IMG/VR virus record: IMGVR_UViG_3300029922_000001
Span: 62,001 to 126,000 of that record
DNA: 64,000 bases
Reading direction: 5' to 3' (one strand)
A model generated the notes under the pieces. The model saw only the letters and a program-made list of their open reading frames with translations. It ran no database searches and was not told the origin of the DNA. A program made the position numbers and the translations under genes. Positions 2,139 to 25,768 of the stretch are shown here, piece by piece; position 1 is the first letter of the stretch, and the number at the start of each line of letters is the position of its first letter.

Positions 2139-3305
2139 ATGAGTAAACGTATCGCGCAGTTTGGTGGCATAGGAGGTATGTCCAATCAAGGTGCCCCTGG
2201 AAGGTCGCCAATTCAATTTGGTAACGCAGGAAACAATGGTAAACCCAATGCAATACAACCTGATGTTGTATTTGATAGTTTATTAAGTCCTTATCAAATT
2301 GGTTGTGATATTGAAAGAAGTATTGAAAATCAATTGGAAATCTTCCATACCGATATGGAAGCTGACCAAATCGCGTATTTAGATCCAAAACAAAGACAAA
2401 AAATTAAAGATGGTCAATATCTTCAAAGAAGAGATGAATATCGTTATAAGCCTTTGGCTAGTGACGAAAAGCCAAGATACCCTAAATTTGTACCTACAGA
2501 AACCGCTTTAAACAATAAGAGGGTAAACGATGATGCTAGATTAAACCAAGATAATGTCGTTGAACATATTAAACCAGACAGAATTCATATGTCTGCTAGA
2601 AAACTCAATAATGATGCTTTAAGATTTATTTTCGCAGATAATAAATTCGAAGAAGATTTAGATGAAAATTTTGATAATGGTGTTTTCGGGATGAACGCTG
2701 ATGGTGCGGAAATTGCAAGATCACCAACTTCTATGGGTGTTGAAGAAGATACTAATATCAATAACATGAAAAATGAAGGTCAAGATAAATATCATATGGA
2801 CCCTGCTAGTGGTGGATACAATTCCCCAAGTGCGCAATACGAAAAAGGTGGTATTGGTGGACGTAGCCAAGCAGATATTGAACATATGTTAAATGACGAT
2901 AAAGATGTTAGTGTAGGTGGTTATGGTAATAAATTACCAGAAAACGGTCAATTCTCTACATTATACGAAGGTGCTGCTGCCAACTATATTCAACCAGATC
3001 AATATTACAAGACAGATACAGAAGCTAAAACCTCTGAACCTGAATTAGATCCACAAATGAAAGAGTTATTAGATGGTATTATGAATAATTCAGAAGTTAC
3101 TACTGAATCCAAACTAAACTTACATAACAAAGTACAAAATCCTTCTCTTCAGGGTCCACCAACAAAGGACATGGATGCTGGATACAGTCAATATGATGCA
3201 TTAGGTAACAGTAAGGATAATAAATTCTATCAAGAAGCTGAAGGCGCAAACACTTGGAAGAATAACCCAGGTTCAATTGCTCAGCCTAGTAGCCCAATGC
3301 CTTAA
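2139..3305 (+). CDS. Hypothetical low-complexity protein, candidate internal head protein
   Basis: 388 aa, N-terminal KRIAQ then Gly/Met-rich segment; D/N/G/Q-rich; next to terL. Confidence 0.75.
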   Translation: MSKRIAQFGGIGGMSNQGAPGRSPIQFGNAGNNGKPNAIQPDVVFDSLLSPYQIGCDIERSIENQLEIFHTDMEADQIAYLDPKQRQKIKDGQYLQRRDEYRYKPLASDEKPRYPKFVPTETALNNKRVNDDARLNQDNVVEHIKPDRIHMSARKLNNDALRFIFADNKFEEDLDENFDNGVFGMNADGAEIARSPTSMGVEEDTNINNMKNEGQDKYHMDPASGGYNSPSAQYEKGGIGGRSQADIEHMLNDDKDVSVGGYGNKLPENGQFSTLYEGAAANYIQPDQYYKTDTEAKTSEPELDPQMKELLDGIMNNSEVTTESKLNLHNKVQNPSLQGPPTKDMDAGYSQYDALGNSKDNKFYQEAEGANTWKNNPGSIAQPSSPMP

Positions 3306-3331
3306 TATAAAATACGTGTATAAATTAAAAT

Positions 3332-4429
3332 ATGCATTACGATTTTCTAATTGTAGGAACTGGCTTTTATGGAGCTACCTTTGCTAACATAGCCCATGCC
3401 AAGGGCTATAAGGTTAGAATGATCGAACAACGCAATATTCCTGGTGGGAATAGCAGTACTGAATTAATACACAACATAAATGTTCATACTCATGGACCAC
3501 ATATTTTTAGAACAAATAAAGAGGAAATATGGGAGTTCATTAATCAATTCACTAAATTTCATCATTATTCACACAGACTAAAAGTAAGTCATAATAATAA
3601 ACTTTATTCCTTTCCCATCAATTTAATGACAATGCATCAGGTTTGGGGTGTAATGTCTCCAAATGAAGCAAAAGATAAGTTAGAGTCTGTAAGAGTTCAT
3701 AATGATAATCCAAAAAATATGGAAGAGTATTGTCTTTCTTTGATTGGTGAAGAATTATATGAAATTTTCATTAAAGGATATACCACTAAACACTGGGGAA
3801 GATCCCCTAAAGAACTACCTGCTTGGATTGTAAAGCGTATCCCTGTACGTTTCAATCTAGATGATCACTATTACCATAATGATAGTCAATATGAAGGTAT
3901 TCCAATTGGTGGTTACACGCGCATGTTTGAGAATATGTTAATAGACATTCCTGTAGATTACAATACTAACTTCATGGAAAATAAAAAAGAACTCAGCAAG
4001 ATAGCAGATAAGATTATCTTTACGGGTTGTATTGATGAATATTACGATTATGCTTTAGGTCGATTAGAATATCGTTCTTTAGATTTTCATCACGAAGTAC
4101 ACAAAGGAGATTATCAAGGTTGTTCTGTTGTTAATTATGCAGATGTAAATATTCCTTATACTCGTATTGTAGAGCATAAACATTTTGAACATTCTGATTC
4201 GGAATACACAATTATAACTAAAGAATATCCCAAAGCTTATACTACAGGTTCCGTTCCATACTATCCCATTAATGATGATACCAACAATAACTTATTTAAG
4301 AGTTACCAAGAGTTAAGTTCTCATGACAATAATGTGGTTTTTGGTGGCAGACTTGGTTCGTATAAATATTACGATATGGATCATGCAATTGCGGCTTCAA
4401 TGACACTTTCAAAAAGGTTATTGAATTAA
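3332..4429 (+). CDS. glf: UDP-galactopyranose mutase
   Basis: FAD-binding N-terminus LIVGTGFYGA, GGN, HTHGPHIFRTN, EYRSLDF, YTRIVEHKHF, PYYP, GGRLGSYKYYDMD; full length 365 aa. Confidence 0.95.
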   Translation: MHYDFLIVGTGFYGATFANIAHAKGYKVRMIEQRNIPGGNSSTELIHNINVHTHGPHIFRTNKEEIWEFINQFTKFHHYSHRLKVSHNNKLYSFPINLMTMHQVWGVMSPNEAKDKLESVRVHNDNPKNMEEYCLSLIGEELYEIFIKGYTTKHWGRSPKELPAWIVKRIPVRFNLDDHYYHNDSQYEGIPIGGYTRMFENMLIDIPVDYNTNFMENKKELSKIADKIIFTGCIDEYYDYALGRLEYRSLDFHHEVHKGDYQGCSVVNYADVNIPYTRIVEHKHFEHSDSEYTIITKEYPKAYTTGSVPYYPINDDTNNNLFKSYQELSSHDNNVVFGGRLGSYKYYDMDHAIAASMTLSKRLLN

Positions 4430-4438
4430 AAAATAGAA
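4413..4438 (+). promoter_or_regulatory. Putative promoter AAAGGTTAT-N14-GAA
   Basis: Overlaps the 3' end of glf; ends 10 nt before ATG 4449. Confidence 0.6.
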
Positions 4439-4448
4439 AGTAAATTAT

Positions 4449-5210
4449 ATGGGGTTAATCCAAACATTAAGATTGGCAAGCGTCTTAGATGGCATAGGCG
4501 ATGACGGCGATTATGAAAAAGCTGACGCCTTAGATCGTCATGTTCTTGCACAAATAGGTTATATTAACCAAAACCCATCAATTAACTGGTTTTTAAGACC
4601 TTGGAGCGATCACGCGCAAGAATTTAAAGATTCAGATTCTAAGCGTCAAAAATTCCATCAATCTACTATCCCAACTTATGGTAGTGGTTATACTCAAGCT
4701 CCTGAAGATTTTTCAGTTCAACCTAAAAAAGTACAAAATGTAAATGTTAGTGAATCTGCAAAACAAATTTTACAAACCATATCTGCACGTCCATGTTTTC
4801 TAAATATCAGCCTTAGAGGTTGTGGCGCTCAAGGAAGTGCTGTATTTGATGTTAAGATTACCAATAAACCACAAGGCGATAGGCAATTCCCTGTCTCCAC
4901 TGATATGTTTGTGGATTTTATGCCTGATACTGAAGGACACGAAAACGGTATATTAGATTGGAATGGTAAGAATTTTGTTTTTCAATCTCCAAACAAATGT
5001 AAACCACAAACCCAAAATACAAAAGAAGTGAGCGACACTTCTACTACTTTATTTAACATGGACGGTGGTAGCGGTGTTAACGGTCCAGCTTATGTAGTTA
5101 ATGACTACAAGAGTATTGGTATGAACGGTGGTAAAACTGGACCATTCGAATGGAATAGTCAACATCGCACTGAAGGCGTCGGAAGTTGGAAAAACGCCAT
5201 GCCAACATAA
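4449..5210 (+). CDS. Hypothetical protein with N-terminal helical tag
   Basis: 253 aa; RLASVLDGIGDDGDYEKADALD followed by HVLAQ. Confidence 0.75.
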   Translation: MGLIQTLRLASVLDGIGDDGDYEKADALDRHVLAQIGYINQNPSINWFLRPWSDHAQEFKDSDSKRQKFHQSTIPTYGSGYTQAPEDFSVQPKKVQNVNVSESAKQILQTISARPCFLNISLRGCGAQGSAVFDVKITNKPQGDRQFPVSTDMFVDFMPDTEGHENGILDWNGKNFVFQSPNKCKPQTQNTKEVSDTSTTLFNMDGGSGVNGPAYVVNDYKSIGMNGGKTGPFEWNSQHRTEGVGSWKNAMPT

Positions 5211-11667: not shown

Positions 11668-12585
11668 ATGGCTAAGAAAACTGCTCAATATTACAATCCA
11701 TCAACTCCTGAAAATTTGCTATTGCAACCAGGAGTTGATGGTCTTGGCAATGCTACTAATGGTGTATTGAGTCCTAGAGAACTATATGATTCATTAAAAA
11801 AAGTTCTTGAAAATACTGATCCAGAATTAGTTCTTGATGAATTAGAAGCAGTTTTAGAAAAATCGAGTAATCCAGACATTAAAGCTCAAATTCAAAGCGT
11901 TATTGATGCTGAAAAATTTGAAGGACATGGCAAGCCAAAAACACAAAACCTAGACACTGGAGAATTTCACAAAGATGGTCCTGCAAGGGCTAGAGAATTA
12001 ATGGAGGATCTGAAACCAATGATCAAAGCAGAAGAACAACAGCCACAACAGCAACAACAACAGTCACCACAGCCACAGCAACAACAGCAAGTAGTGGCTA
12101 AAGTTAGAAAGAATGATAAGCCAGCTAAGGATGACAGTAGAGGCAATCCTTTCAAGGTTTTGCTTGGTCAAATTGGTAAATTAAAGGATCATGGCGCAAG
12201 TGATAGTGAAGTTAAGAAATTCTTACGTAAAGATGGTATTTTTGGTGATGATATAATTGATAAAGGTCTTAAAATCTATAAAGATTTACAAAAAAAGAAA
12301 TCTAAAACACCAAAGAAAGCTTTTAATCTTAATGAATATCGTATCGCATTAGCTGCATCCGAAAAAGAGCCTGAAACAATTTATGATGTTCCACCTGATT
12401 TCATCAAGAGAAGCACTAATGAATTGATGGCACGTTTAGGTTGGTTAAAGTCATTAGAATCAATGACTAAAGACTCTCCCATAGGTGAAGGTAGAGAAGC
12501 TTTTAGTAAAGAAGGCGCTTCTGAGGAAATTACTAAAATTAAAAAAGCTTTACGTAGTAGAGGATTTGACGAATCTGAAATCTAA
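11668..12585 (+). CDS. Hypothetical protein with poly-Gln tract
   Basis: Starts MAKKTAQ; EEQQPQQQQQQSPQPQQQQQ near 12031-12090. Confidence 0.75.
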   Translation: MAKKTAQYYNPSTPENLLLQPGVDGLGNATNGVLSPRELYDSLKKVLENTDPELVLDELEAVLEKSSNPDIKAQIQSVIDAEKFEGHGKPKTQNLDTGEFHKDGPARARELMEDLKPMIKAEEQQPQQQQQQSPQPQQQQQVVAKVRKNDKPAKDDSRGNPFKVLLGQIGKLKDHGASDSEVKKFLRKDGIFGDDIIDKGLKIYKDLQKKKSKTPKKAFNLNEYRIALAASEKEPETIYDVPPDFIKRSTNELMARLGWLKSLESMTKDSPIGEGREAFSKEGASEEITKIKKALRSRGFDESEI

Positions 12586-12607: not shown

Positions 12608-14029
12608 ATGAGAAAAACAGCAGGACACGAAGAAATTATCCACAGTGACACTTTTCCCAGTGCAACAGATAAGTACGATCCATGCGGAGATGATGCTAAA
12701 GATTACGAAACCTTAGAAGGCGAAAATCGTCGTGAGGAATCTTTTGATCATTCTATGGAAAATCAAGGTTGCGAAGGTGAAGGTGGTGCTGAAATAGATG
12801 GTAGTAAATTACTTAACATCTTTGAAAATGCTGTAACTCCTGTTTTTGAAAAATTACTTGATGGTCACGCTGAAGAAGGCGAAACTATTGAAGAAGACGT
12901 GAAACATGGTCCTTCTAGTAGCGTTAAGGTAATGAAGATTGACAATCCTTTAGATGTTTTCGGAAATGATGATTTTGATCATGGTTGTCCAGTTATTCAA
13001 CAATTAGAAAAAAGCTTAGGTGGCGATTTACCAACTAAACTACAGCCTTTATTTGATTGGGATGAAATAAGTGAAGAAGGCGATGAAAATAAAGAAGGTT
13101 TAATGCAATTAGCAAACACCTATAATCAATTTGTCAAACACTTATCTAAACTAGTGGAAGCACAAAAACTTTCTAACTTGAGAATGGCTTATTCTTACTT
13201 AAACAAGACTATTCAAGATCCAACTAATGTCGAAGTTAAATACAAGGCATTAAACAGTTTGAGAACCGCACAAAAGTATAGCAATAATCCAACAGAAATT
13301 GCTATACTTAGCAAAGCAGTTGATGCTGTCTTGAAAGGCACTCCAGAATTTTTAGATGCTGCTAAATACAGAACTCACCAAGTTTTCGCTTCCAATGTTG
13401 TAGCACCTAATATTAGAACAGCTTACACTACATTAGCTACTCAACCTGGTGAAGACTTCCTAATGTGTCCTAAAGGTTTGGATATGTTAGGTTATCCTAT
13501 TGCTATGGAAATTAGCAAGTGTAGAGATAATTGTATTGATAGTAGAGTAAATAGAGAATCAGGTGCAATCACTTGTGGCTATAAAGCTTGGATTAATAAT
13601 GTTGCTGATTCTAATAAGAAAGCAATGGCAAGATTAGATGTTCACAGACACCCAGATAATAAGAATAGCTTATTGTCTCTAAAGGCTGGTGAAAGAGGAC
13701 ATGATGATCCTACAATTACTACCGAAGCATCAATGAAGAAAGCAAAGCTTAACGATTCTAAAGTTTCAGATAAGACCTTAGCTGTTCAATTAGATGAATT
13801 CCATAAAGATGGCGAAAGATTGCAAGATCAAAAAGAAAAGGCAGAAAAGAAGGTTAAAGAATCCGATCTTCATGGTGTTGATGCTAGAAATACCAATAAA
13901 GATTCAGATGATAAAAGCTTCTTTGCTGGAATCGAAAAAAATCACAAAGCATTAACTGACGAAGATGTTAATAGATCACTTAATGCATGGTTAAACAAGC
14001 ATAGAGAAGACAATAAAAAGGGGAAATAA
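12608..14029 (+). CDS. Hypothetical protein with Cys-containing central domain
   Basis: Starts MRKTAG; RMAY, RTAQ, RTAY motifs; CPKG...KCRDNC...TCGYKAW segment. Confidence 0.75.
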   Translation: MRKTAGHEEIIHSDTFPSATDKYDPCGDDAKDYETLEGENRREESFDHSMENQGCEGEGGAEIDGSKLLNIFENAVTPVFEKLLDGHAEEGETIEEDVKHGPSSSVKVMKIDNPLDVFGNDDFDHGCPVIQQLEKSLGGDLPTKLQPLFDWDEISEEGDENKEGLMQLANTYNQFVKHLSKLVEAQKLSNLRMAYSYLNKTIQDPTNVEVKYKALNSLRTAQKYSNNPTEIAILSKAVDAVLKGTPEFLDAAKYRTHQVFASNVVAPNIRTAYTTLATQPGEDFLMCPKGLDMLGYPIAMEISKCRDNCIDSRVNRESGAITCGYKAWINNVADSNKKAMARLDVHRHPDNKNSLLSLKAGERGHDDPTITTEASMKKAKLNDSKVSDKTLAVQLDEFHKDGERLQDQKEKAEKKVKESDLHGVDARNTNKDSDDKSFFAGIEKNHKALTDEDVNRSLNAWLNKHREDNKKGK

Positions 14030-18165: not shown

Positions 18166-18232
18166 AGGTGAAATATATGTGGTTTTTCAAAAAATCATTT
18201 CTGAGCATCGTTTAAGGGAGCCAAAAGAAAAC

Positions 18233-21200
18233 ATGATACGCAAAGGAATATCAGGCGGTGTAATAGGTTTAAACAATTTAATTTGTTTGAACAAAAAAGA
18301 AGCAAACGCAATTAAGGCTAGAATCTTAACGGCATCTAGTTTGCGTGAAAGTGCCCGTATCGGTTTGCAACGTTTGTATGCAGACCCCGAAGATGCACTA
18401 AAGAAATATAAAGGAACCGAATTTGACATCGCCAACGAAATGCTTGAACGTCGTGGCATGAAATTACTATGGGTTAGATGTAGAGCTATTGACGCTAACG
18501 TAGTAAATGCTAATGGTGATTACTTCTCTACTAAAGAGTTATTGAAAGAAACCATACACAATGGCAAAAAAGTTCCAGCCTATAAAACATTTGAAGGCGT
18601 ACCAATTTATACCAATCATGAAAATGATGACATTGAAAAAGCAAAAGGTACTGTAGTTTATGCAGAGTGGGACGAAAAGGAAGAAGCGGTTTATTGTGTA
18701 TTTTACATAGACGAAGAAGCTTATCCCGAAATTGCTCATGCTATTCGTGGTGGAATTATGCACGACGTTAGTATGGGTTGTTTTATTCCAGGTACTAGAG
18801 TATTAACTAATTCAGGATATAAGAATATTGAAAATGTAAATATAAACGATTTACTTTTAGATAAAGATGGTAATTTTACCACTATAGTTAATAGACAAAT
18901 TAAAATTAAAAACGAAGATATTTTTGACATTAAATTTAATGGCGGCTTAACCATTAGTGCAACAAAAGAACATCCTCATTTTGTATTTAAAAAAGATGTA
19001 TGGAAATCTAGAAAAACTAGAAATAAACCAGGCAAAGGAAAAGAACGATGGTCTTATAAAGATATTGGAGAGCCAATTGAAATTACTTCTGAAAACTTAG
19101 AAGTTGGTGACGTGCTAGTAACACCTATTAATCAGGTTGAATTAAATCCTGATAATATAACTCCTGATTTCGCTAGATTATTAGGTTATTTTTTGGCTGA
19201 AGGAAATTTTCTTAAATACAATGATTCTATTAAAGAATTAGAGCTTACTTTTGGTCTTCACGAAAAATATACATTAGTTCAAGAATTTATTACACTTTTT
19301 TCAAAAGAATTTCCAAATTCTACAATTAGAGTATATGATCGTATACCTAACAATAATTGTGTTATTAGAGTATATGACACTGAAATAGCTAATTTATTTT
19401 ACAAATATTGCGGAGAATATTCTGATAGTAAAAAACTAGATTCATCATTAATGTTCCTTCCTAAAAATATTCAATTAGAATTAATCAAAGGGTATTTTAA
19501 TGGTGACGGTTGTATTCATCGTGCTAAAGATCGTGTTATTGGATTAAGCGCATCTTCTTGTTCTTTGGATTTAGTAGAACAAATCTCAATGATATTATTT
19601 AGAAATGGAATTTATCACAAGAAAAATGGAAGAATTAATGGGAAATATATTGAATATACCAAATCTAAAGAAGCATGGAAGCAGAAAGGTGATTTTAGGA
19701 AAACATATTATGAAATTTCTATTCCTCAAGCTTATTGTCCTCAATTGTTAAATGAAACTAGATTTGATTTTCAACCCAACTTACGACAAGATAATTTTCA
19801 TTATGGTAATTGGATAATTCATCCAATTAAAAACATAATCAAAAGACACTATGAAGGATTAGTATATAATTTTGAAACAGAAAGCCATACATATATGGTT
19901 GAGAATTTTGCTACTCATAATTGCGCGGTTCAATCTGGTAATTGTTCAATTTGTGGCAAAGAAGCAGTTAAGGAAGATGATTACTGTAGTCACATGAAGA
20001 ATTACAAGGGTAAGAAATTCCCTGGAACTGGCGAAATTGCTTACGAAAAGAATAAAGATATTAAGTTTATTGAAATCTCTATTGTTGCAGATGGTGCTTT
20101 TGATTCTTGTATGATTAAAGAAATTTACGAACAAGAAGAAATTGAAAATGCTGCTTCACAATTAAGACATAAGACTGCAAGTGTACAAGCAAACATTCTA
20201 TTAGCTGAAAACAATCTTCCAGAAGACATGCTTGAAAGAAGAAAGAGTGAAGAATTCTTACGTGCTATCAATAATTGTAATATTGAAATCTTTAGATTCG
20301 CTGAAAAATTAGGACACACAACTAGAATAGCTCAAGAAGCTGGAACATTAGTTGGTGGACAAATGGGTGGTGGACAAATAGGACAAAACGCTACAGTTAA
20401 TACACTAATGCAATTACTAGGTATTGATCCTACTACTGGATTAAATATCTTAGACATGTTGAACTTAGCTCTTAACTTCTTAGAAGTTGCAGTTATGGAA
20501 TTACTTTCTAAGAGTAGTTCAGTTAAGCTTGAGTACGTTAACAAGGTGACTAAAGCTATGACAGATTTACAAGATGTTATGGAAGACGTTATTAATGACG
20601 GTGTTGATGTTGCACAACAACCACAAGGTGTTCAATTACAAGGTGGTCCAGTTTCACAACAGCAACCAGTACCAGGACAGCAACCACAAGGACAACAACA
20701 ACAAACTCAAGTACCAGGTCAAGGACAACCAGGACAGGTACAACAGCAAGCAAATGTTATGCCAATGGCTTATCAACCAGCAGTTGGTCAGGTAACAGGT
20801 CCTATGTTTGGCGCTTTACCTGGTGTTACAGCTACATCAAGTAATAGAAAATTAGTATGGGCATCACATGATGACGATGATGTTCGTGAGGTTTTTGCCT
20901 CTAGCAATAGAGGTACCAGTGTAAAGAAAGTTAAATCTTTCGATGAAGCTTTAACTCACATTGGAGAAGTAGTTATCAAACTAGCAAGTGCAGTTGGTGT
21001 TGCTGACGATTCATCACTAAAAGCACTCAATTTTAAAATTAAAAAGAATCAAGAACAAAGCAAATCGACTCAACCCGGAGGAAACAATATGGAAAACAAC
21101 ATCTTCAACGAAATGGCGCAAAGACATCGTTTGCGCAACGCATCCAAACTCTCTATTGATGCAGTGTTTACAGACCACTCAAATAGATATAGTGTAGCCA

Positions 21201-23788
21201 TCTCAACAGATGGAACTGTCAAAGCGTCTGTAGACAACAAGCGTGTTGCTTGGGATTGTAGATTGAACGATACTCAAATCGAACGTCTTCAAAACAATGA
21301 CATTGCTCCTGTAGGTAACGAAATTCTAGATACATTTGTTGGTTTTGTTAAAACCGCAGAAACAGAAGGACGTAAAATTCTTGCATACGAAAAGCCAAAA
21401 ACTGTTACTAACATTTTCGAAGTTAGCTTAGAAGGTGAAAGAACTGGTACTGATGATGATGTTAGAGAAAACACTATCAAACCATTAAGAACCGGTGTTG
21501 AAGACGAAACTCAAGAAGTTAAACTTGAAAAGTATCGTACAGGCGTTAAAGAAGATGTTAGAGAAAATCTACTAGCAGATGAAGCTGGTTTATATGCACG
21601 TCGTAACGAAGAACGTGATATTGCAGAAGTTCTTTTGGAAGATGCTCGTGTTGGAGTTAATGAAGAAGTATTAGAAAATAAGCTTAATCATCACCGTGCC
21701 CAAGAAAGCAGTGTTGAAACACATGAAGCTGTTGCTAAAGTTCTAAGTGGTTTTGGTAATGCTGTACTAGCATCTAAGAATACTCCAGATGAAGTAGTTA
21801 CTGCCGCTATTGAATTAGCTAAGAAAGACAACTTCAATGAATTATTGGTAGTTGCTGCTGCTGGAACACAAACTAGAACAAAAGTTGCTTCTAGATATGC
21901 TTTCCACAACAAACCACTTCCTACACTATCTGCTTCTGCCGCTGTTCTTAATGAATTAGGTAAGGTAATCGTTAGTGGAGTTTCTGCTGTTGATGTTGCT
22001 CAAATTGTTAGAGAAGCAAGTGCAAATAAAGATCATGCTGTTAAAGCAGCATATATTGATGCTAAAGGTAAAATGGGAGAAGACTTCTCATTCGACGCTT
22101 ATTATTCTCAAAGAGAAGCAAGTAAAACAGACGCTATTCGTGTCGCGTTAGCTAGTTTATCAGGCGATGCAAATGATAACATTTCAGGTGTTGAACAAGT
22201 TAAAACAGCTTTGGCTGCTATGGCAAAAACAACTGTTGCTATCAAAGTTACACCAAAGGAAATTCTTACAGTATTAGCTAGTGTTGATGCTAAGCAATTA
22301 TCCAAGGACTTAACAGTTGCAAGAGATGCTAAAGAAGTTAAAGCAAGAAATGATTTACGTGAAAGAGTTGCCTTCTTTGAAGGTGCAAACATCCGTATCG
22401 CTAGTGAAGTAGACATCTACAATACTATCGTAGGTTACTTAGCTGACTATGCCAACAAAGATAAGTTCAATACATCTTCTATCGTAGAAGCTATTGGTAG
22501 AGTTGTAGACAAACCTCGTTATGCTGAGAAATATGTTTCTCGTTTAGCTTTCTCAAGTATTAGAGAAGCTGAAGCTACTATTACAGAAGACACAAACATC
22601 ACTCGTCGTCTTCAATGTACATTGGGTGAATTAGGATTAGACGCTAAAGATGAAAACTTTGACGACATGTTAAAGCAAAAAGTTGCTGAACTATTCGTTC
22701 AAAGAGGATATCCTATTGATCCAAACAACTTTAATCTAACTGATGTTATGATTACTGCTGAAGGTGCATGTACAGCAACTATTAGTACACGTTCAACAAA
22801 GACATTCAAAGTTGATCCTAGTGAATCTGGTGAAGATGAAAATGTAATCTCAGTAGATGGCGCTCCTACTCCTTTTGAACCAGAAGCACAACCTACAGAG
22901 GGTGAAGGCGTTCCTCTTGTTCCTACAGATATGTCTCTACCTCCGACAGATCCAAACGAACAACCAACTATCATGACTGCTGGTGCAATTGCTCTTAGAA
23001 AAGCTAAGAGAGAAAATCTATTAAGATTAGCTCAAATGCCAGGTGGCGGTGGTGGTGGAATGCCAGGTGCTGGCGGTGGAATGCCAGGTGGTGCTGGTGC
23101 TGCTGGTGCTGCTGGCGCACCTGATTTATCTGGTGCTGGTGACGGTCCTGGTGTTGGTGCATTAACCAATCCTCCTGATGGTGGATTAGATGATATGGGT
23201 GGAAGTGATCAAGCTACTGAAAACAAGGATTCTATGCCTACTCCTGGTAAGCAACTTCCTTGGGGTTCAATCTGTCCTGCCTGTGGTTCTGCTAGTGTTT
23301 CATTAGTAGACGGTAAAGGTAGCTGTGCTGATTGTAAAGCTGAAATCACATATGAATTCAAAGCAACAGTTATTCCTGGTAGCAAGAAGAATGAAGAAGC
23401 TCCTACAGATGAAATGTCTATGGACATTCCAGGCTTAGGAACCTTGCCAGGTGCTGAAGCTGGTGCAAATGGTGCAACCCCTCCTGCTGGTGGCGCACCA
23501 GGAATGGGCGGTGCTGCTCCTGCTGGTGGACAAGCTCTACTACAAGCACAAGCTTCTTGGTTAGCTGATAGTCGTACTTTTGTTAGAACAGCACAAGCTG
23601 ACTTTAACAAAGCTACAGAACAAGTTCTACCTCCTGGTTTCATCTGTCCTGGTTGTGCAAACAGAGAAGTTAATAAACTTGGATCTCAAACATTCTGTTA
23701 CGCTTGTAAGACAATAAGTAAGAGTCAAATTATAGCTTCCAGAATCCCTGGAAAGGTTATAGCTAGAGTCACTTGGGTTCTTAAATAA
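18233..23788 (+). CDS. Prohead (maturation) serine protease fused to a long scaffold-like region; intein-containing
   Basis: NANGDYF, IYTNH (putative catalytic His), DVSMG (putative catalytic Ser), CSICG..CSH, FIEISIVADGA fit HK97-type prohead proteases; AAGGGAG SD favours start 18233 over GTG 18179. Confidence 0.85.
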   Translation: MIRKGISGGVIGLNNLICLNKKEANAIKARILTASSLRESARIGLQRLYADPEDALKKYKGTEFDIANEMLERRGMKLLWVRCRAIDANVVNANGDYFSTKELLKETIHNGKKVPAYKTFEGVPIYTNHENDDIEKAKGTVVYAEWDEKEEAVYCVFYIDEEAYPEIAHAIRGGIMHDVSMGCFIPGTRVLTNSGYKNIENVNINDLLLDKDGNFTTIVNRQIKIKNEDIFDIKFNGGLTISATKEHPHFVFKKDVWKSRKTRNKPGKGKERWSYKDIGEPIEITSENLEVGDVLVTPINQVELNPDNITPDFARLLGYFLAEGNFLKYNDSIKELELTFGLHEKYTLVQEFITLFSKEFPNSTIRVYDRIPNNNCVIRVYDTEIANLFYKYCGEYSDSKKLDSSLMFLPKNIQLELIKGYFNGDGCIHRAKDRVIGLSASSCSLDLVEQISMILFRNGIYHKKNGRINGKYIEYTKSKEAWKQKGDFRKTYYEISIPQAYCPQLLNETRFDFQPNLRQDNFHYGNWIIHPIKNIIKRHYEGLVYNFETESHTYMVENFATHNCAVQSGNCSICGKEAVKEDDYCSHMKNYKGKKFPGTGEIAYEKNKDIKFIEISIVADGAFDSCMIKEIYEQEEIENAASQLRHKTASVQANILLAENNLPEDMLERRKSEEFLRAINNCNIEIFRFAEKLGHTTRIAQEAGTLVGGQMGGGQIGQNATVNTLMQLLGIDPTTGLNILDMLNLALNFLEVAVMELLSKSSSVKLEYVNKVTKAMTDLQDVMEDVINDGVDVAQQPQGVQLQGGPVSQQQPVPGQQPQGQQQQTQVPGQGQPGQVQQQANVMPMAYQPAVGQVTGPMFGALPGVTATSSNRKLVWASHDDDDVREVFASSNRGTSVKKVKSFDEALTHIGEVVIKLASAVGVADDSSLKALNFKIKKNQEQSKSTQPGGNNMENNIFNEMAQRHRLRNASKLSIDAVFTDHSNRYSVAISTDGTVKASVDNKRVAWDCRLNDTQIERLQNNDIAPVGNEILDTFVGFVKTAETEGRKILAYEKPKTVTNIFEVSLEGERTGTDDDVRENTIKPLRTGVEDETQEVKLEKYRTGVKEDVRENLLADEAGLYARRNEERDIAEVLLEDARVGVNEEVLENKLNHHRAQESSVETHEAVAKVLSGFGNAVLASKNTPDEVVTAAIELAKKDNFNELLVVAAAGTQTRTKVASRYAFHNKPLPTLSASAAVLNELGKVIVSGVSAVDVAQIVREASANKDHAVKAAYIDAKGKMGEDFSFDAYYSQREASKTDAIRVALASLSGDANDNISGVEQVKTALAAMAKTTVAIKVTPKEILTVLASVDAKQLSKDLTVARDAKEVKARNDLRERVAFFEGANIRIASEVDIYNTIVGYLADYANKDKFNTSSIVEAIGRVVDKPRYAEKYVSRLAFSSIREAEATITEDTNITRRLQCTLGELGLDAKDENFDDMLKQKVAELFVQRGYPIDPNNFNLTDVMITAEGACTATISTRSTKTFKVDPSESGEDENVISVDGAPTPFEPEAQPTEGEGVPLVPTDMSLPPTDPNEQPTIMTAGAIALRKAKRENLLRLAQMPGGGGGGMPGAGGGMPGGAGAAGAAGAPDLSGAGDGPGVGALTNPPDGGLDDMGGSDQATENKDSMPTPGKQLPWGSICPACGSASVSLVDGKGSCADCKAEITYEFKATVIPGSKKNEEAPTDEMSMDIPGLGTLPGAEAGANGATPPAGGAPGMGGAAPAGGQALLQAQASWLADSRTFVRTAQADFNKATEQVLPPGFICPGCANREVNKLGSQTFCYACKTISKSQIIASRIPGKVIARVTWVLK
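18779..19921 (+). mobile_element. Intein with LAGLIDADG homing endonuclease (381 aa)
   Basis: N-terminal CFIPGTRVLT, block B SATKEHP, LAGLIDADG motifs LLGYFLAEG and IKGYFNGDG, C-terminal VYNFETESHTY...THN followed by +1 Cys; visibly more AT-rich than its flanks. Confidence 0.95.
21440..21698 (+). repeat. About five degenerate ~16-aa repeats (R-T/V-G-x-[DE]..E..L) in the protease extension
   Basis: RTGTDDDVRENTIKPL / RTGVEDETQEVKLEKY / RTGVKEDVRENLL / RRNEERDIAEVLLEDA / RVGVNEEVLENKLNHH. Confidence 0.7.
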
Positions 23789-23794
23789 GCCCTA

Positions 23795-23836
23795 AATGAT
23801 GCCCACTATTTCGATAGTGGGCATCATTGTTTTATT
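23795..23836 (+). terminator. Rho-independent terminator after the protease gene
   Basis: Perfect 15-bp stem AATGATGCCCACTAT / ATAGTGGGCATCATT, TTCG loop, T-rich tail. Confidence 0.85.
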
Positions 23837-23888
23837 TTTCCCCAACAGTAAAAAAAACCGCGATATTTATTCCTTCGTTTTCAAATAA

Positions 23889-23914
23889 AAAGGATTTTTC
23901 CATTTTTTTTAGTA
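23889..23914 (+). promoter_or_regulatory. Putative promoter AAAGGATTT-N14-GTA
   Basis: Intergenic, between the terminator and the scaffold-decoration-capsid genes. Confidence 0.65.
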
Positions 23915-23971
23915 TGAGTAATATGTAAGCACTCAATTGAGTGCAAGACAGATCGCAGGAGCGAGTCAAAT

Positions 23972-25768
23972 ATGAAGAATAACAATGACAGAATAGCGAA
24001 AGCGATGAGGTTAGCCGAACTTGCCTTAGAAGATAAGCGTGATGTAAATCAATGCATTGATGAAATGCAAACATTCGCAGGTTTATCTCCTGAAGAAGCA
24101 AAGATCGTAACTTCTTCACTCAGAGCGGGACTTTACCCTCAAGAATTAAGAGCGGAAGGTTTCTCTGATGAAGAAATTCAACACCTTATCACTGCTAATG
24201 CTGACTTCGCAACAGACCCAACTCAAACGCCTCAACCATTCCAAAAGCCAGTTAAATCTGGAGTACCTGGAGTAGTTGAATACAAAGACGAAACTGATGA
24301 TACAGATGAAGATTCCGAACCAGCAATGCTAGGTGGAGAAGACGAAGATGAAGATGCAGTAGATGACACTGAAACAAACGAATTTCCAACAACAGACCCA
24401 AGCGAAGATACAGATGACGAATTTGATACAACCGGTAATGATGACACTGCTGAACTAACAGTAGAAGTGCCTAAAGAAAAATTACTTGCCCTTCAACAAG
24501 CTATTGCAGATGTTTTTGCCGAACAAGGTATGGATGACTTTGGTGATACCGAATCTCCATCTCCATTTGACGGTGACGACACTAGTGAATTTGCTAACGA
24601 AAGCGGTTCAGACGAACACTTGCATTCAGGTGACGACGATGAACTCGGTGACGATTATGACATAGAAATTATGGACGACGAACCAGTTCATGGCAAACCT
24701 GCATCACGTGGTTTCCCTAAAGAACCTGATTTCGGTAGTGAAGATGAAGTAGATGATGTTCGTGATTTTGACGATGATAAACATGTTTTATCAAAATTAG
24801 AGGTAGACAAAATGACTAAAGAAGTTTTAGCTAAAAGAAAAGCCGCTAGAGAGGCATTACTAGCACAAGCAAAGACAAAGAGCGTCAGAACAGCATCAGA
24901 TGGAGAGCAAGAAACAAAGGGCGTTGGCTTAGCTGCTGACCCTGCTTCTAATACATTTGATAAATCAAAGGCTGCTCAATTGCACACAGATGAATTTGAT
25001 TTTGAACGTGACAGCTTAGACAATAGTCAAGGCAGTGAACTCGTTAACGAAGCAAAGTGGAAACCTGCAAAACAAGAAATTCCTACTTTGAACAAGGGAC
25101 GTTTAGAACTCAACAAGGCATATACACCTTCTACTATGGAAGGTTCACCAGAAGATCGTTCTGATTACGTTATTGACTTTGATGTTTATGACATTCCAAG
25201 CCAAATGACTGATGCAGAACGTGGCAAATTACCCAAGATTCCTCAAACCGAAGGTGGCGCATTTGATTCTCATAGAGGTCAAGTATTAGCTACTGCTAAA
25301 GACGGTAAGAAAGAAAAGAAAGGCGACAAGGAAGCAGAAAATCTAAAGATTGAAGTTGAAGCGAAAGCTAAGAAAGCTTTAGATGAAGCATTTATTTCTG
25401 AAAGAGCAAGAATGAAGACTGCTTATTCATGTGCTTATAGATTAGTTGCAGCTAACCACATTAACGTGGATGAAGCTGATGGATTCGTAGACATGTGGCT
25501 AGACAATAACGCAACAGCTAAACAAATTAAGGTGCAAACCGGTGTTATGCTTCGTTCTTCTGGCGCTATCAACAATAACAGAATGGCATCATCTGATGCT
25601 CCTTCTACTAGAACAGCTTCAAAATCAACAGTACCAACCTTTGTGGGCTACGGTTCACTAAGCAATCCTGCTGTCGAAGATTTGAAACAGGCATTGAGCG
25701 GGGTTTGGTCCACTCCCAGCAAAGATGAATTTGAACAATGGACTAACAGAAATTTGGAGGATAAATAA
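23972..25768 (+). CDS. Acidic scaffold-like protein
   Basis: 598 aa, very D/E-rich first half, coiled-coil-like C-half, VRTAS/RMAS/RTAS motifs; lies between protease and capsid genes. Confidence 0.6.
   Translation: MKNNNDRIAKAMRLAELALEDKRDVNQCIDEMQTFAGLSPEEAKIVTSSLRAGLYPQELRAEGFSDEEIQHLITANADFATDPTQTPQPFQKPVKSGVPGVVEYKDETDDTDEDSEPAMLGGEDEDEDAVDDTETNEFPTTDPSEDTDDEFDTTGNDDTAELTVEVPKEKLLALQQAIADVFAEQGMDDFGDTESPSPFDGDDTSEFANESGSDEHLHSGDDDELGDDYDIEIMDDEPVHGKPASRGFPKEPDFGSEDEVDDVRDFDDDKHVLSKLEVDKMTKEVLAKRKAAREALLAQAKTKSVRTASDGEQETKGVGLAADPASNTFDKSKAAQLHTDEFDFERDSLDNSQGSELVNEAKWKPAKQEIPTLNKGRLELNKAYTPSTMEGSPEDRSDYVIDFDVYDIPSQMTDAERGKLPKIPQTEGGAFDSHRGQVLATAKDGKKEKKGDKEAENLKIEVEAKAKKALDEAFISERARMKTAYSCAYRLVAANHINVDEADGFVDMWLDNNATAKQIKVQTGVMLRSSGAINNNRMASSDAPSTRTASKSTVPTFVGYGSLSNPAVEDLKQALSGVWSTPSKDEFEQWTNRNLEDK

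What the first reader, a model, noticed from the sequence alone, without database searches (positions are those of the whole stretch)
2139..25768. Pervasive [RK]-hydrophobic-A-[QSEYG] motif at domain boundaries: candidate prohead-protease cleavage site
Seen: head-module proteins are studded with KRIAQ, RLAS, LRTAQ, KKTAQ, RKTAG, RMAY, RTAY, RRVAG, RIAF, RVAQ, RIAQ, VRTAE, VVTAQ, HKTAS, TRIAQ, VKTAE, IRIAS, LRLAQ, VRTAQ, VRTAS, MKTAY, RMAS. It recurs in 45629-46690 and 56433-58559 (KVAS, RFAQ, KTAA, RLAY, RYAQ). It typically sits just after the start Met or just before Gly/Gln/Pro-rich linkers, and seems absent from glf, the intein and the capsid protein. Established: T4 gp21 and the phiKZ protease process many head proteins at a short consensus ending in Glu. 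Inference: this phage uses a different, Ala-P1-like specificity and encodes several head proteins as polyproteins.
Basis: partly seen in the sequence, partly recalled or inferred. Interest (0 to 1): 0.75.

Follow-up and report, generated by a model that had tools for sequence, protein, structure and literature searches.

The report
Head-protease cleavage motif in a megaphage
The head-assembly proteins of this 441-kb relative of Bacillus phage G carry a short conserved motif, [K/R]-hydrophobic-Ala-[Ser/Gln], which is most likely where the phage's own herpesvirus-like head protease cuts them; cutting has not been shown experimentally.

Summary
The core [RK][TIVLMFY]A[QS] occurs 20 times against 2.6. 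Of the 24 orderings of the four residue classes, only this order is strongly enriched, and the rest of the 441-kb genome is at background.

The enrichment is repeated in seven syntenic metagenomic relatives, in phage G, and in 110 non-redundant protease polyproteins (704 vs 116±11).

Individual sites are conserved in position:
- before the portal core;
- between the portal and its fused nuclease;
- at the C-terminal end of the protease domain;
- before Gly-rich linkers in the 1869-aa protease polyprotein;

The protease domain models as a T4 gp21/herpesvirus-assemblin fold with invariant His and Ser. A co-fold puts the motif on those two residues (weak support). T4/phiKZ-type x-E motifs are not enriched.

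Best reading: a prohead-protease site, probably cut Ala↓Ser/Gln, laid out like the herpesvirus R and M sites. Cleavage and the scissile bond are inferred, not shown. The claims "just after Met" and "before linkers" hold only in part. This is a new variant of a known kind, and it can be tested in cultivable phage G.

The parts
18179..23788 (+). 1869-aa protease polyprotein ORF. The likely true start is Met19, nt 18233. Order of parts: N-terminal prohead protease, intein, helical hairpin, several domains separated by disordered Q/P/G-rich linkers, and two C-terminal CxxC...CxxC Zn-ribbon-like modules.
   Evidence: It matches PHROG 18299 'head maturation protease' at 1.7e-18. Homologues start at MxRK-GxxGG. 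Most of the 150 best protease homologues listed are polyproteins of 1000-2600 aa. It is the protein most enriched for the motif in the whole genome: 7 core sites, Poisson p about 1e-6. The model of aa 700-1869 shows alternating folded and disordered segments.
18233..18778 (+). N-extein of the protease domain. It holds the conserved NxNGDxFS and TNHxNDD (His147) motifs and ends at DVSMG (catalytic Ser198).
   Evidence: His and Ser (H130 and S181 in P0121 numbering) are invariant in 54 homologues. The model has pLDDT 85; its best PDB matches are T4 gp21 5jbl (Z 10.4, rmsd 2.5 Å) and herpesvirus proteases (Z 7.5-9.2).
18779..19921 (+). LAGLIDADG intein (aa 201-581) inserted directly after the catalytic Ser-Met-Gly. 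It runs from Cys1 to His-Asn, followed by the +1 Cys. It contains no copy of the motif.
   Evidence: Pfam LAGLIDADG_3, Intein_splicing and Hom_end_hint match here. The translation and the homologue alignment show DVSMG|C...HN|CAVQSGNCSICG.
20171..20182 (+). KTAS (polyprotein aa 665): first of two release-type sites after the protease core.
   Evidence: In 85 intein-free polyproteins the first downstream site clusters 86 and 127 residues after the catalytic Ser. Relatives carry KVAS or KTAQ followed by the same xxxNIxLA context.
20324..20335 (+). RIAQ (aa 716), followed by the conserved EAGTLVGGQ and a disordered linker: second release-type site at the end of the protease's C-terminal helices.
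   Evidence: [KR]-[LIV]-AQ-xAGTLVGG is conserved in L003, L004, L007 and many P01xx sequences. It aligns with KVAS 248 of phage G gp19. In the model it sits where a helix ends and a stretch of pLDDT below 50 begins.
22394..22405 (+). RIAS (aa 1406): internal polyprotein site, followed by the conserved xxDxxxxIVGWLADYA.
   Evidence: A basic-x-[A/S]-[S/G/T] tetrapeptide aligns here in all 7 polyprotein orthologues, with A-S in three of them (L003, L004, L007). In the model it lies in a loop with a local pLDDT dip.
23024..23035 (+). RLAQ (aa 1616) at the end of a helix, immediately before a 70-residue Gly/Met/Pro-rich disordered linker.
   Evidence: It is conserved in all 7 polyprotein orthologues. 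Ala-Gln is invariant in the 25-sequence alignment A4. The low-pLDDT segment starts exactly here. The equivalent peptide of L007 was the one docked on the active site.
23585..23596 (+). RTAQ (aa 1803), about 20 residues before the last Zn-ribbon-like module.
   Evidence: RTAS, RTAM, KVAS or RLAA sits at the same column in 4 of the 7 polyprotein orthologues. The model places it inside a confidently folded terminal domain, so cleavage here is less certain.
14851..17475 (+). Portal protein (Mu/PHROG 16240 type) fused at its C-terminus to a DUF559/Vsr-like endonuclease domain.
   Evidence: Pfam Portal_Mu, DUF559 and MTES_1575; PHROG portal at 1.3e-37. Nearly all of the 120 listed homologues share the fusion.
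15046..15078 (+). RTAN-RMN-RIAF (portal aa 66-76), followed by a GGMGGGG linker and then the conserved portal core: predicted removal of an N-terminal propeptide of about 70 residues.
   Evidence: A [RK]-x-A-Q tetrapeptide (Ala replaced by Ser or Gly in three, Gln by Phe or Asn in three) occupies these columns in all 36 aligned portals (33-76% identity), inside an otherwise unalignable N-terminal region. Phage G has RKMAS at aa 55.
16645..16782 (+). RVAQ 599, RIAQ 609 and RTAE 641 in the segment between the G/M/P-rich linker after the portal core and the DUF559 nuclease domain.
   Evidence: Y-[RK]-h-A-[SAQ] is conserved at the RIAQ column, and an R-T-A-S site follows in most of the closer homologues. 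More distant homologues instead carry K-[TY]-A-S after the nuclease domain.
23972..25768 (+). 598-aa scaffold-like protein encoded between the protease polyprotein and the decoration-like and major capsid genes. Sites: RTAS 306, KTAY 482, RMAS 537, RTAS 547.
   Evidence: Its gene position is the same in L002-L005 and L007. It is the second most enriched protein in the genome. KTAY, RMAS and RTAS are conserved in 3-4 of 5 orthologues. Its role as a scaffold is inferred from gene position only.
25580..25621 (+). [quoted passage not shown]
   Evidence: Tunturi_5 gp332 has KVAS 18 residues from its C-terminus.
12608..14029 (+). 473-aa head-module protein with KTAG 3, RMAY 192, RTAQ 219 and RTAY 270.
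   Evidence: RTAY 270, followed by TTLxxQxGE, is conserved in 4 of 5 orthologues, and RMAY 192 in 2 of 5. Coordinates were verified.
11677..11688 (+). KTAQ at aa 4-7 of the 305-aa protein 11668-12585: an N-terminal propeptide-type site.
   Evidence: KTAQ or KYAQ is found at or near the N-terminus in L002, L003 and L007.
2148..2159 (+). RIAQ at aa 4-7 of the 388-aa protein 2139-3305 (MSKRIAQFGGIGG).
   Evidence: The L004 orthologue starts MDKRIANFGGVGG.
4470..4481 (+). RLAS at aa 8-11 of the 253-aa protein 4449-5210.
   Evidence: The L002 orthologue reads LKLS here, so conservation is weak.
26465..27334 (+). Major capsid protein (HK97 type, 46% identical to phage G gp27). It carries no motif and serves as a negative landmark.
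   Evidence: PHROG 2522 at 1.6e-65; tblastn. There are no sites in 2,576 aa of nine orthologues.

Best explanation
The tetrapeptide [K/R]-[T/L/V/I/F/Y/M]-Ala-[Ser/Gln (Gly, Tyr, Ala)], often preceded by two hydrophobic residues, is the recognition site of this phage's own prohead serine protease. That protease is the N-terminal domain of ORF 18179-23788.

Proposed sequence of events:
1. The LAGLIDADG intein splices out of the active-site loop.
2. The protease, a T4 gp21/herpesvirus-assemblin-fold enzyme with a His/Ser pair, is built into the procapsid as part of a polyprotein of about 1,470 residues.
3. It cuts itself free at two sites just after its catalytic domain (KTAS 665, RIAQ 716). This matches the herpesvirus release site.
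4. It cuts the rest of the polyprotein into separate internal head proteins (conserved sites RIAS 1406 and RLAQ 1616, perhaps RTAQ 1803).
5. It removes an N-terminal propeptide of about 70 residues from the portal, and probably separates or trims the portal's C-terminal nuclease domain.
6. It clips short N-terminal peptides from several minor head proteins.
7. It cuts the scaffold-like 598-aa protein, including a tandem site about 50 residues from its C-terminus. This matches the herpesvirus maturation site.

The scissile bond is most likely Ala↓Ser/Gln: P3 basic, P2 β-branched or hydrophobic, P1 Ala, P1' Ser/Gln.

Shown here: the enrichment, its restriction to the head module, positional conservation across a large clade, the protease fold, and the invariant His/Ser. 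Inferred: that cleavage happens, which bond is cut, which matches are real sites, and the scaffold role of the 598-aa protein.
For: 1. Enrichment and specificity. Only the forward order of the residue classes is enriched, and the rest of the genome is at 1.2x.

2. Out-of-sample replication.
- Seven syntenic metagenomic head modules: z 5.5-10.5.
- Phage G gp2-27: 15 against 2.8±1.6, while the neighbouring gp28-73 give 3 against 2.1.
- LR745208.1: 15 against 4.0±2.0.
- 110 cluster-representative polyproteins: 704 against 116±11.

3. Each position is separately constrained: K/R 5-6x, T/L/V/I/F 5-9x, Ala 6x, Ser 9x and Gln 6x. There are weak hydrophobic preferences at the two positions upstream and nothing downstream.

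4. Positional conservation inside variable sequence.
- The portal N-terminal site is present in 36 of 36 homologues.
- Polyprotein sites 716, 1406 and 1616 are conserved, with Ala-Gln invariant at 1616.
- The first site falls 86 or 127 residues after the catalytic Ser in 85 polyproteins, and the catalytic core itself is depleted (0.46 per 1000 aa).
- The scaffold-like C-terminal tandem site is conserved.

5. The enzyme. PHROG head maturation protease; invariant His and Ser; fold matches to T4 gp21 (Z 10.4) and to herpesvirus assemblins (Z up to 9.2).

6. Co-folding the protease core with a 26-residue peptide gives ipSAE 0.47 against a best control of 0.04. The tool's verdict is 'weak support'; that mark was reached by 51 of 78 solved complexes and 2 of 108 mismatches. 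The confident contacts are peptide residues 1183-1191 (ILN-RYAQ-AA) against residues 129-130 and 181-189, which include the invariant His130 and Ser181.

7. Sites 716 and 1616 coincide with transitions from helix to disordered linker in the model, and site 1406 with a dip in a loop.

8. Precedent. Herpesvirus proteases cut after Ala at R and M sites in a protease-scaffold fusion (PMC4498786). SPN3US, T4 and phiKZ proteases process many head proteins at a short motif, with Ser preferred at P1' (PMC10052503).
Against: - There is no experimental evidence of cleavage for this phage or for phage G. The phage G proteome paper held here says nothing on cleavage sites, and the 2020 structure paper could not be read.
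- The co-fold is rated only 'weak support', the peptide's pLDDT is below 50, and the output does not show which bond faces the Ser.
- Several matches lie in helices or folded cores: portal RYAG 340, polyprotein 1235 and 1447, and 1803 inside a confident domain. About half of the window's matches are not conserved in orthologues. The true substrate list is therefore shorter than the match list.
- Related sequences share ancestry, so the replication is not fully independent.
- The protease domain has no Pfam or PDB sequence-level match.
Confidence: 0.75

Rival explanations
1. The motif is a real, conserved short linear motif of head proteins, but it is a docking or targeting signal rather than a cut site. 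For example, it could be a capsid-targeting or scaffold/portal-binding peptide, or an exosite ligand of the protease.
For: The conservation and head-module restriction fit a binding motif as well as a cleavage motif. T4 internal proteins use a short N-terminal capsid-targeting sequence (general knowledge). Some copies lie in helices.
Against: The positions look like cut sites: the ends of the protease domain, junctions between folded modules and disordered linkers, and the region just before the conserved portal core. The co-fold puts the motif on the catalytic His/Ser and not on an exosite. A strictly small residue followed by Ser/Gln resembles the P1/P1' pattern of the assemblin family.
Confidence: 0.1
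2. The sites are cut, but by a host protease or by a second phage protease (phage G also encodes ClpP), not by the prohead protease of ORF 18179-23788.
For: In Staphylococcus phage 80α, the host Prp protease cuts capsid and scaffold proteins after ...F-A (from memory, not checked here). Phage G packages ClpP/ClpX.
Against: Motif enrichment tracks the protease family across phages from marine, freshwater, soil and gut-type samples, which must have very different hosts. The motif flanks the protease domain itself at fixed distances. The co-fold is specific for this protease when compared with an unrelated protein.
Confidence: 0.04
3. The motif is a substrate motif (R-x-x-S) for the Ser/Thr protein kinase encoded between the portal and the protease (17408-18124).
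For: A Pkinase-family gene sits inside the head module. Basophilic kinases favour Arg at -3 from Ser (general knowledge).
Against: Gln, Gly, Tyr and Phe occupy the last position at the best-conserved sites. Ala at -1 is the most constrained position. The kinase gene is present only in the window and in L002, whereas the motif is enriched in all relatives and in phage G.
Confidence: 0.02
4. The enrichment is a by-product of composition, helical periodicity or shared ancestry of paralogous head proteins, and no factor reads the motif.
For: Head proteins are richer in Ala, Lys and Arg than tail proteins. Many matches are not conserved. Related genomes are not independent samples.
Against: Per-protein shuffles keep composition and still give z of about 10. 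Only one of 24 class orderings is enriched. The motif stands as an island of identity in regions that otherwise cannot be aligned. It recurs in non-homologous proteins: portal, protease polyprotein, scaffold-like protein and minor proteins.
Confidence: 0.04

Closest known systems
Herpesvirus assemblin (MEROPS S21) with its release (R) and maturation (M) sites in the protease-scaffold fusion (HSV UL26, PrV pUL26)
   Same: - Same fold class (Z 7.5-9.2).
- The protease is the N-terminal domain of a longer assembly protein.
[quoted passage not shown]
- A small residue (Ala) is followed by Ser/Thr-like residues at the predicted scissile bond; PrV uses YLQA-T and VQA-S (PMC4498786).
   Different: - The residue two positions before Ala is basic (K/R) here, where herpesviruses have a hydrophobic residue. 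The residue just before Ala is hydrophobic or Thr here, where herpesviruses have a polar residue.
- Gln is common after Ala.
- There are many more substrates, and the C-terminal extension is about 1,200 residues and multidomain.
- A third catalytic His was not identified.
- Sequence similarity is undetectable.
- The host is a bacterium.
T4 gp21 (MEROPS S77) and the phiKZ gp175 / SPN3US gp245 prohead proteases
   Same: - Closest solved structure: 5jbl, Z 10.4, 23% identity over 129 residues.
- One protease processes many head proteins (portal, internal/ejection proteins, scaffold and itself) at a three- to four-residue motif. This often removes N-terminal propeptides. Ser is preferred at P1' in SPN3US (PMC10052503).
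   Different: - Those enzymes cut after Glu ((L/I)-x-E, (S/A/G)-x-E, A-x-E). Such motifs are not enriched here.
- The MCP here appears uncut (no motif).
- The protease here leads a giant polyprotein and is interrupted by an intein.
Bacillus phage G gp19 (annotated head maturation protease) and its head module gp2-gp27
   Same: - Orthologous protease core, 36% identical over aa 110-201, in a syntenic head module.
- Its MCP is 46% identical to this window's.
- The same K-h-A-S motif is enriched (15 against 2.8). It includes the end of the protease domain (KVAS 248, KIAS 274) and both ends of the portal (KMAS 55, KIAS 625).
   Different: - gp19 is a stand-alone 300-aa protein, not a polyprotein.
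- Lys and Ser dominate there, where Arg and Gln are common in the window.
- The phage G paper that could be read here (PMC12484599) does not mention cleavage sites or specificity; the 2020 structure paper was not available.
HK97 gp4-type prohead proteases (MEROPS S78, Pfam Peptidase_S78/U35)
   Same: Same superfamily of capsid-maturation Ser/His proteases, encoded between the portal and capsid genes. The capsid protein has the HK97 fold.
   Different: No Pfam hit to S78/U35 models, even at E≤1. HK97 degrades the MCP delta domain, whereas this MCP has no delta domain and no motif.

Membership tests
Assemblin/T4 gp21-fold prohead serine proteases (MEROPS clan SH) | The characteristic β-barrel protease fold | tested here: met
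   An AF2 model of an intein-free orthologue (pLDDT 85) matches T4 gp21 5jbl at Z 10.4, rmsd 2.5 Å over 129 residues. It matches the VZV, PrV, HSV, HCMV, KSHV and EBV proteases at Z 7.3-9.2.
Assemblin/T4 gp21-fold prohead serine proteases (MEROPS clan SH) | Conserved catalytic Ser and His | tested here: inconclusive
   His130 (N-H motif) and Ser181 (S-M-G) are invariant in 54 homologues and contact the docked peptide. Their residue-by-residue superposition on the gp21 or assemblin catalytic residues could not be checked because no coordinates were available. A third catalytic residue was not identified.
Assemblin/T4 gp21-fold prohead serine proteases (MEROPS clan SH) | Sequence-profile membership (Pfam S21, S77, S78/U35) | tested here: not met
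   There is no Pfam protease family hit at E≤1 for six orthologous protease domains, and no PDB sequence or profile hit. Only PHROG 18299 'head maturation protease' matches, at 1.7e-18.
Assemblin/T4 gp21-fold prohead serine proteases (MEROPS clan SH) | Gene located between the portal and major capsid genes in the head module | tested here: met
   The order portal, (kinase), protease polyprotein, scaffold-like, decoration-like, MCP holds in the window and in L002-L005 and L007; in L006 and L008 no separate scaffold-like ORF lies between polyprotein and MCP, but the protease gene still lies between portal and MCP.
Assemblin/T4 gp21-fold prohead serine proteases (MEROPS clan SH) | Proteolytic activity on head proteins | not testable with these tools
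   This needs virion N-terminomics or in vitro cleavage.
T4/phiKZ-type Glu-P1 specificity ((L/I/S/A/G)-x-E↓) | Substrates carry x-E motifs at propeptide boundaries; enrichment in head proteins would be expected | tested here: not met
   In the window head module, [LI]xE gives 84 against 77±8, [SAG]xE 112 against 123±9 and AxE 45 against 49±6. Results are similar in the 7 relatives.
Herpesvirus-type specificity ((V/L/I)-x-A↓S) with R/M-site layout | Ala at P1 and Ser (Thr) at P1' | tested here: inconclusive
   Ala is the most constrained position, and Ser (9x) or Gln (6x) follows it. The scissile bond itself cannot be determined from sequence.
Herpesvirus-type specificity ((V/L/I)-x-A↓S) with R/M-site layout | Hydrophobic residue at P3 and polar residue at P2 | tested here: not met
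   K/R occupies the position two residues before Ala, and T/L/V/I/F the position one before.
Herpesvirus-type specificity ((V/L/I)-x-A↓S) with R/M-site layout | [quoted passage not shown] | tested here: met
   Sites fall 86 and 127 residues after the catalytic Ser in 85 polyproteins. A tandem site lies 50-60 residues from the end of the scaffold-like protein and is conserved. The scaffold role of that protein is assumed from gene order only.
Class 1 intein with LAGLIDADG homing endonuclease (the interruption in the protease) | N-terminal Cys, C-terminal His-Asn followed by Cys/Ser/Thr, Hint and LAGLIDADG domains, and restoration of the host-protein alignment on removal | tested here: met
   The sequence reads CFIP...THN|C. 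Pfam LAGLIDADG_3, Intein_splicing and Hom_end_hint match. Removing aa 201-581 restores DVSMG-CxVxxGxCSICG as in intein-free homologues.

The most novel reading that the evidence does not exclude
A large, globally distributed clade of phage-G-like megaphages builds its head with a herpesvirus-style strategy taken much further. An assemblin-fold protease leads a polyprotein of 1,000-2,600 residues. The protease cuts this polyprotein after Ala at [K/R]-h-A↓[S/Q] into a set of internal head or ejected proteins, including Zn-ribbon modules, and it also frees a nuclease from the portal. On this reading, Ala-P1 specificity and the R-site/M-site layout would be shared between herpesviruses and a phage lineage, either by descent or by convergence. 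The motif would also allow the packaged proteome of uncultivated megaphages to be predicted from sequence alone.
Probability: 0.35. Interest if true: 0.72.

Novelty: new variant of a known kind. Interest (0 to 1): 0.6.

Why it matters
Prohead proteases with a short consensus site are known for T4, phiKZ/SPN3US and herpesviruses. No specificity has been described for the phage G lineage in the literature I could search.

If confirmed, the [K/R]-h-A-[S/Q] rule would:
1. Give mature protein boundaries for the head proteins of phage G, the only cultivated megaphage, and of thousands of metagenomic relatives. The protease family has 2,749 cluster representatives.
2. Show that giant protease-led polyproteins are a normal way for these phages to deliver internal head proteins.
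3. Add a bacterial-virus example of Ala-type specificity and R/M-site logic to the argument that phage and herpesvirus capsid proteases are related.
4. Define the peptide that host immune sensors of phage protease activity would need to mimic. CBASS CD-NTases with decoy loops for T4 gp21 were reported recently (PMC12991175).

It can be tested directly with existing phage G virion preparations.

Tried and rejected
- A megablast of 12 kb of the head module against GenBank phages found nothing.
- A single-sequence scan of IMG/VR with the portal found nothing. Relatives were reached through the protein database instead.
- PHROG searches gave no hit for most minor head proteins or for the two secondary regions. 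Pfam likewise gave nothing for 45629-46690 and 56433-60913, so their link to the head is unresolved.
- Pfam and PDB sequence or profile searches did not recognise the protease domain. Only structure comparison did.
- I tested whether the scaffold-like protein is fused to the end of the polyprotein in L006 and L008, which lack a separate ~600-aa gene. A profile of six orthologues found no match there, so I dropped the idea.
- Foldseek's top hits to MCE/MlaD proteins come from the barrel-plus-long-helix shape. They have low TM-scores and I disregarded them.
- The phage G proteome paper has no cleavage data and no supplementary text is held. The 2020 phage G structure paper is not held.
- Literature searches for a described Ala-type phage prohead protease site, or for protease polyproteins in huge phages, found nothing relevant.
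- Rejected readings: a kinase substrate motif, a host Prp-like site, and a composition artefact. Reasons are given under the rival explanations.

Full report
**Context.** The window is bases 62001-126000 of a single 441,498-bp contig with 34% G+C. ORF calling and family searches show a head module on the + strand:

| Coordinates | Feature |
|---|---|
| 162-1688 | large terminase |
| 3332-4429 | UDP-galactopyranose mutase (glf) |
| 8991-9356 | DUF192 protein |
| 14851-17475 | Mu-type portal fused to a DUF559/Vsr-like nuclease |
| 17408-18124 | Ser/Thr kinase |
| 18179-23788 | 1869-aa ORF; its N-terminus matches PHROG 18299 'head maturation protease' and is interrupted by a LAGLIDADG intein |
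| 23972-25768 | 598-aa protein |
| 25771-26451 | 226-aa protein |
| 26465-27334 | HK97-type major capsid protein |

The capsid protein is 46% identical to gp27 of Bacillus phage G (497 kb), and phage G's head module is syntenic. The window therefore comes from a megaphage of the phage G lineage.

Per-protein shuffles give 8.9±2.9, with a maximum of 20 in 1,000 shuffles. The fibre/tail region 33516-56367 has 5 against 4.8.
- Along the whole genome, the three 10-kb bins covering the head module hold 45 of 155 hits (3.6-5.4 per 1,000 aa). Most other bins are near 1 per 1,000 aa (none above 2.1).
- A k-mer scan made without reference to the motif ranks RTA, RIA, RVA, RYA, IAQ, RTAQ and RIAQ highest once Q/G/M low-complexity words are set aside.
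- The core [RK][TIVLMFY]A[QS] gives 20 against 2.6±1.5.
- Among the 24 possible orderings of the four residue classes, only the forward order is strongly enriched: 7.5x in the head module and 1.2x in the rest of the genome. Composition or generic helix periodicity is therefore not the cause.
- All the listed peptides exist, and their coordinates were verified.
- glf, the intein and the capsid protein have none.

**Replication outside the window.** A portal search found more than 160 homologues, nearly all with the same portal-nuclease fusion and many on contigs of 100-490 kb. I fetched seven syntenic loci with 38-55% portal identity, from freshwater, marine (TARA) and other metagenomes.
- Phage G: gp2-27 have 15 [RK]hA[QSG] against 2.8±1.6, while gp28-73 next door have 3 against 2.1.
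- The 485-kb uncultured phage LR745208.1: 15 against 4.0±2.0 in its head module.
- The more distant Tunturi_5 is not enriched overall. All five of its hits nevertheless lie at the C-terminal end of its protease, in the next (scaffold-position) protein 18 residues from its end, and in an 'ejection protein'.
- An exhaustive search with the protease domain found 2,749 cluster representatives. Most of the 150 best listed are 1,000-2,600 residues long. In 110 of these polyproteins (185,008 aa), [RK][TIVLMFY]A[QSG] occurs 704 times against 116±11.

**Anatomy of the motif.** Pooling eight head modules, each position is separately constrained: R 6.1x and K 4.3x; T 3.4x and V/I/L 2.2-2.4x; Ala 5.0x; Ser 3.9x and Gln 3.8x. 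The polyprotein set gives the same picture with larger numbers, plus weak preferences for Met/Leu and Val/Ile at the two positions before the basic residue. Nothing is detectable after the Ser/Gln position.

**Positional conservation.**
- *Portal, N-terminal site.* In an alignment of 36 portals (33-76% identity), a [RK]-x-A-Q tetrapeptide (with Ser/Gly for Ala or Phe/Asn for Gln in a few) occupies the same columns in all 36. It lies inside an N-terminal region that otherwise cannot be aligned, and is followed by a Gly-rich linker and then the conserved portal core. The window reads RTAN-RMN-RIAF-GGMGGGG.
- *Portal, C-terminal sites.* A second site (Y-[RK]-h-A-[S/A/Q]; window RIAQ 609) follows the Gly/Met/Pro linker after the core, and a third R-T-A-S-type site precedes the nuclease domain. 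More distant portals have K-[T/Y]-A-S after the nuclease domain instead.
- *Polyprotein.* The conserved sites are RIAQ 716 (followed by the conserved AGTLVGGQ; aligned with KVAS 248 of phage G gp19), RIAS 1406 (all 7 polyprotein orthologues), RLAQ 1616 (all 7; Ala-Gln invariant in 25 sequences) and RTAQ 1803 (about half).
- *Around the catalytic core.* In 85 intein-free polyproteins the catalytic core is nearly free of the motif (0.46 per 1,000 aa). The first site downstream of the catalytic Ser clusters at +86 and +127, which are the window's KTAS 665 and RIAQ 716.
- *Scaffold-position protein.* It has conserved KTAY 482 and a tandem RMAS 537/RTAS 547, 50-60 residues from the C-terminus and upstream of a conserved tail.
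- *Minor proteins.* Some conserve N-terminal sites, for example MSKRIAQFGG against MDKRIANFGG, and KTAQ in 11668-12585.
- *Caveat.* About half of the window's matches are not conserved. One of them, portal RYAG 340, lies in the conserved core and is probably structural.

**Do sites lie at domain boundaries?** Partly. A model of polyprotein residues 700-1869 (mean pLDDT 61; folded blocks 75-90) places:
- sites 716 and 1616 exactly where a helix ends and a long segment with pLDDT below 50 begins;
- site 1406 in a loop with a local dip in confidence;
- sites 934 and 1058 at helix ends before low-confidence stretches;
- sites 1235 and 1447 in helices, and site 1803 inside the last confident domain.

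Pooled statistics are modest. N-terminal placement is 9 against 5.8. G/P/Q/M-rich sequence follows a site 11 times against 7.2±2.6, but precedes one only once against 7.3.

**The enzyme.** The protease domain has no Pfam or PDB sequence match. In an alignment of 54 homologues, a His (N-H motif) and a Ser (S-M-G) are invariant, as are three Cys. An AF2 model (pLDDT 85) matches T4 gp21 best (Z 10.4, rmsd 2.5 Å, 129 residues, 23% identity), and then the VZV, PrV, HSV, HCMV, KSHV and EBV proteases (Z 7.3-9.2). In the window, the intein (aa 201-581) sits immediately after the Ser-Met-Gly, so the protease cannot be active before splicing.

**Does the motif meet the active site?** I co-folded the protease core (L007 orthologue, aa 40-295) with its own 26-residue peptide around RYAQ 1186-1189.
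- The score was ipSAE 0.47 (three runs: 0.36-0.51), against 0.04, 0.03 and 0.00 for the controls.
- The tool's verdict is 'weak support'. That mark was reached by 51 of 78 solved complexes and 2 of 108 mismatches, but scores at or below 0.60 are often wrong.
- The confident interface is peptide residues 1183-1191 (ILN-RYAQ-AA) against protease residues that include 129-130 and 181-189, that is, the invariant His130 and Ser181.
- This is a model, not a measurement, and it does not say which bond is attacked.

**Which bond?** This is inference.
- Ala is the most constrained position and tolerates almost no substitute.
- The next position accepts Ser, Gln, Gly, Ala, Tyr and Phe.
- All remaining information lies upstream.
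- This is the pattern of a P1 residue followed by a tolerant P1'. Herpesvirus proteases of the same fold cut Ala↓Ser/Thr (PrV YLQA-T and VQA-S; PMC4498786), and SPN3US gp245 prefers Ser at P1' (PMC10052503).
- I put about 75% on Ala↓[S/Q], given that cleavage occurs at all.
- T4/phiKZ-type motifs ending in Glu are not enriched.

**Mechanism proposed.** After intein splicing, the protease-led polyprotein is co-assembled into the procapsid. The protease releases itself at the two sites after its core, as at a herpesvirus R site. It dissects the rest of the polyprotein into internal proteins. It trims the portal's N-terminal ~70 residues and cuts between portal and nuclease. It removes short N-terminal peptides from minor head proteins. 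It cuts the scaffold-position protein, including near its C-terminus, as at a herpesvirus M site. The capsid protein has no delta domain and no motif (0 in 2,576 residues of nine orthologues) and stays intact.

**Rivals.**
- A non-cleaved docking motif fits the conservation, but fits the placement and the active-site docking less well.
- A host protease is unlikely, because the motif follows the phage protease family across very different environments.
- The head-module kinase is excluded as the reader of the motif. Gln, Gly and Tyr occupy the last position at the best sites, and the kinase gene is absent from most relatives that keep the motif.
- Composition or ancestry alone is excluded.

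**Comparison with known systems and novelty.** The system works like the T4/phiKZ/SPN3US and herpesvirus maturation proteases. By fold it belongs to that superfamily, but it fails sequence-profile membership in the curated families, and its motif differs from all of theirs. The phage G paper that could be read (PMC12484599) does not discuss cleavage specificity, and my searches found no description of this motif or of these polyproteins. The 2020 phage G structure paper could not be read, so earlier mass-spectrometric hints there cannot be excluded. I rate it a new variant of a known kind.

**Verdict.** Confidence in the protease-site explanation is 0.75. Interest is 0.6.

Noticed in passing
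window 18779-19921: A 381-residue LAGLIDADG intein is inserted immediately after the catalytic Ser-Met-Gly of the prohead protease, so splicing must precede any protease activity. The L004, L005 and L008 orthologues also carry inteins in the protease (Pfam hits), while L002, L003 and L007 do not.
   Followed up: partly
window 14851-17475 (nuclease part roughly 17100-17475): The portal protein is fused to a DUF559/MTES_1575 (Vsr-like) endonuclease domain. The fusion is present in nearly all of the 120 listed homologues, but phage G's 648-aa portal has no room for the domain. What a nuclease does on a portal is unexplained. Motif sites lie between the two parts.
   Followed up: partly
window 17408-18124: A Ser/Thr protein-kinase-family gene sits between the portal and the protease. 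It is shared only with the closest relative, L002. The listed GTG start overlaps the end of the portal gene, so the real start is probably later.
   Followed up: partly
window 3332-4429: A UDP-galactopyranose mutase gene (glf; Pfam GLF 5e-76) lies inside the head module and is conserved at the same place in L002. This is an odd location for a sugar-nucleotide enzyme.
   Followed up: no
window 8991-9356: A DUF192 protein is conserved in the head module of all seven relatives. It is one of the few head-module genes with a Pfam match, and its function there is unknown.
   Followed up: no
window 23270-23340 and 23640-23710 (polyprotein aa 1699-1719 and 1823-1843): Two CxxC...CxxC Zn-ribbon-like modules lie at the C-terminal end of the polyprotein. 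Their Cys residues are invariant or nearly so in 25 homologues, and a disordered linker separates the two modules.
   Followed up: partly
window 18179-18233: The listed GTG start of the polyprotein ORF is probably too far upstream. Homologues begin at the equivalent of Met19 (MIRKGISGG), nt 18233.
   Followed up: partly
window 56433-58559: A 708-aa protein encoded outside the head module has KTAA at aa 7 and RLAY...RYAQ followed by a (TPT)n repeat. There are six loose motif matches but no family hit. It could be a packaged protein encoded elsewhere. A few other genome proteins start with M-x-K-I-A-Q-like peptides, for example genome 14878-16542 and 228687-229361.
   Followed up: partly
window 46702-51205 (- strand): A T4 RNA-ligase-like protein (46702-47961) lies next to two NPCBM-domain proteins (47973-49859 and 49859-51205), and a 1753-aa protein (38248-43509) has a PA14 domain. 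These are probably tail-fibre or receptor-binding genes. Phage G is reported to have an RNA ligase associated with tail-fibre attachment.
   Followed up: no
L006 and L008 (loci): These more distant relatives lack a separate ~600-aa scaffold-position gene and have longer polyproteins (1929 and 2306 aa). A profile of the scaffold-like protein did not match them, so it is not clear whether the scaffold function is fused in or has been replaced.
   Followed up: partly
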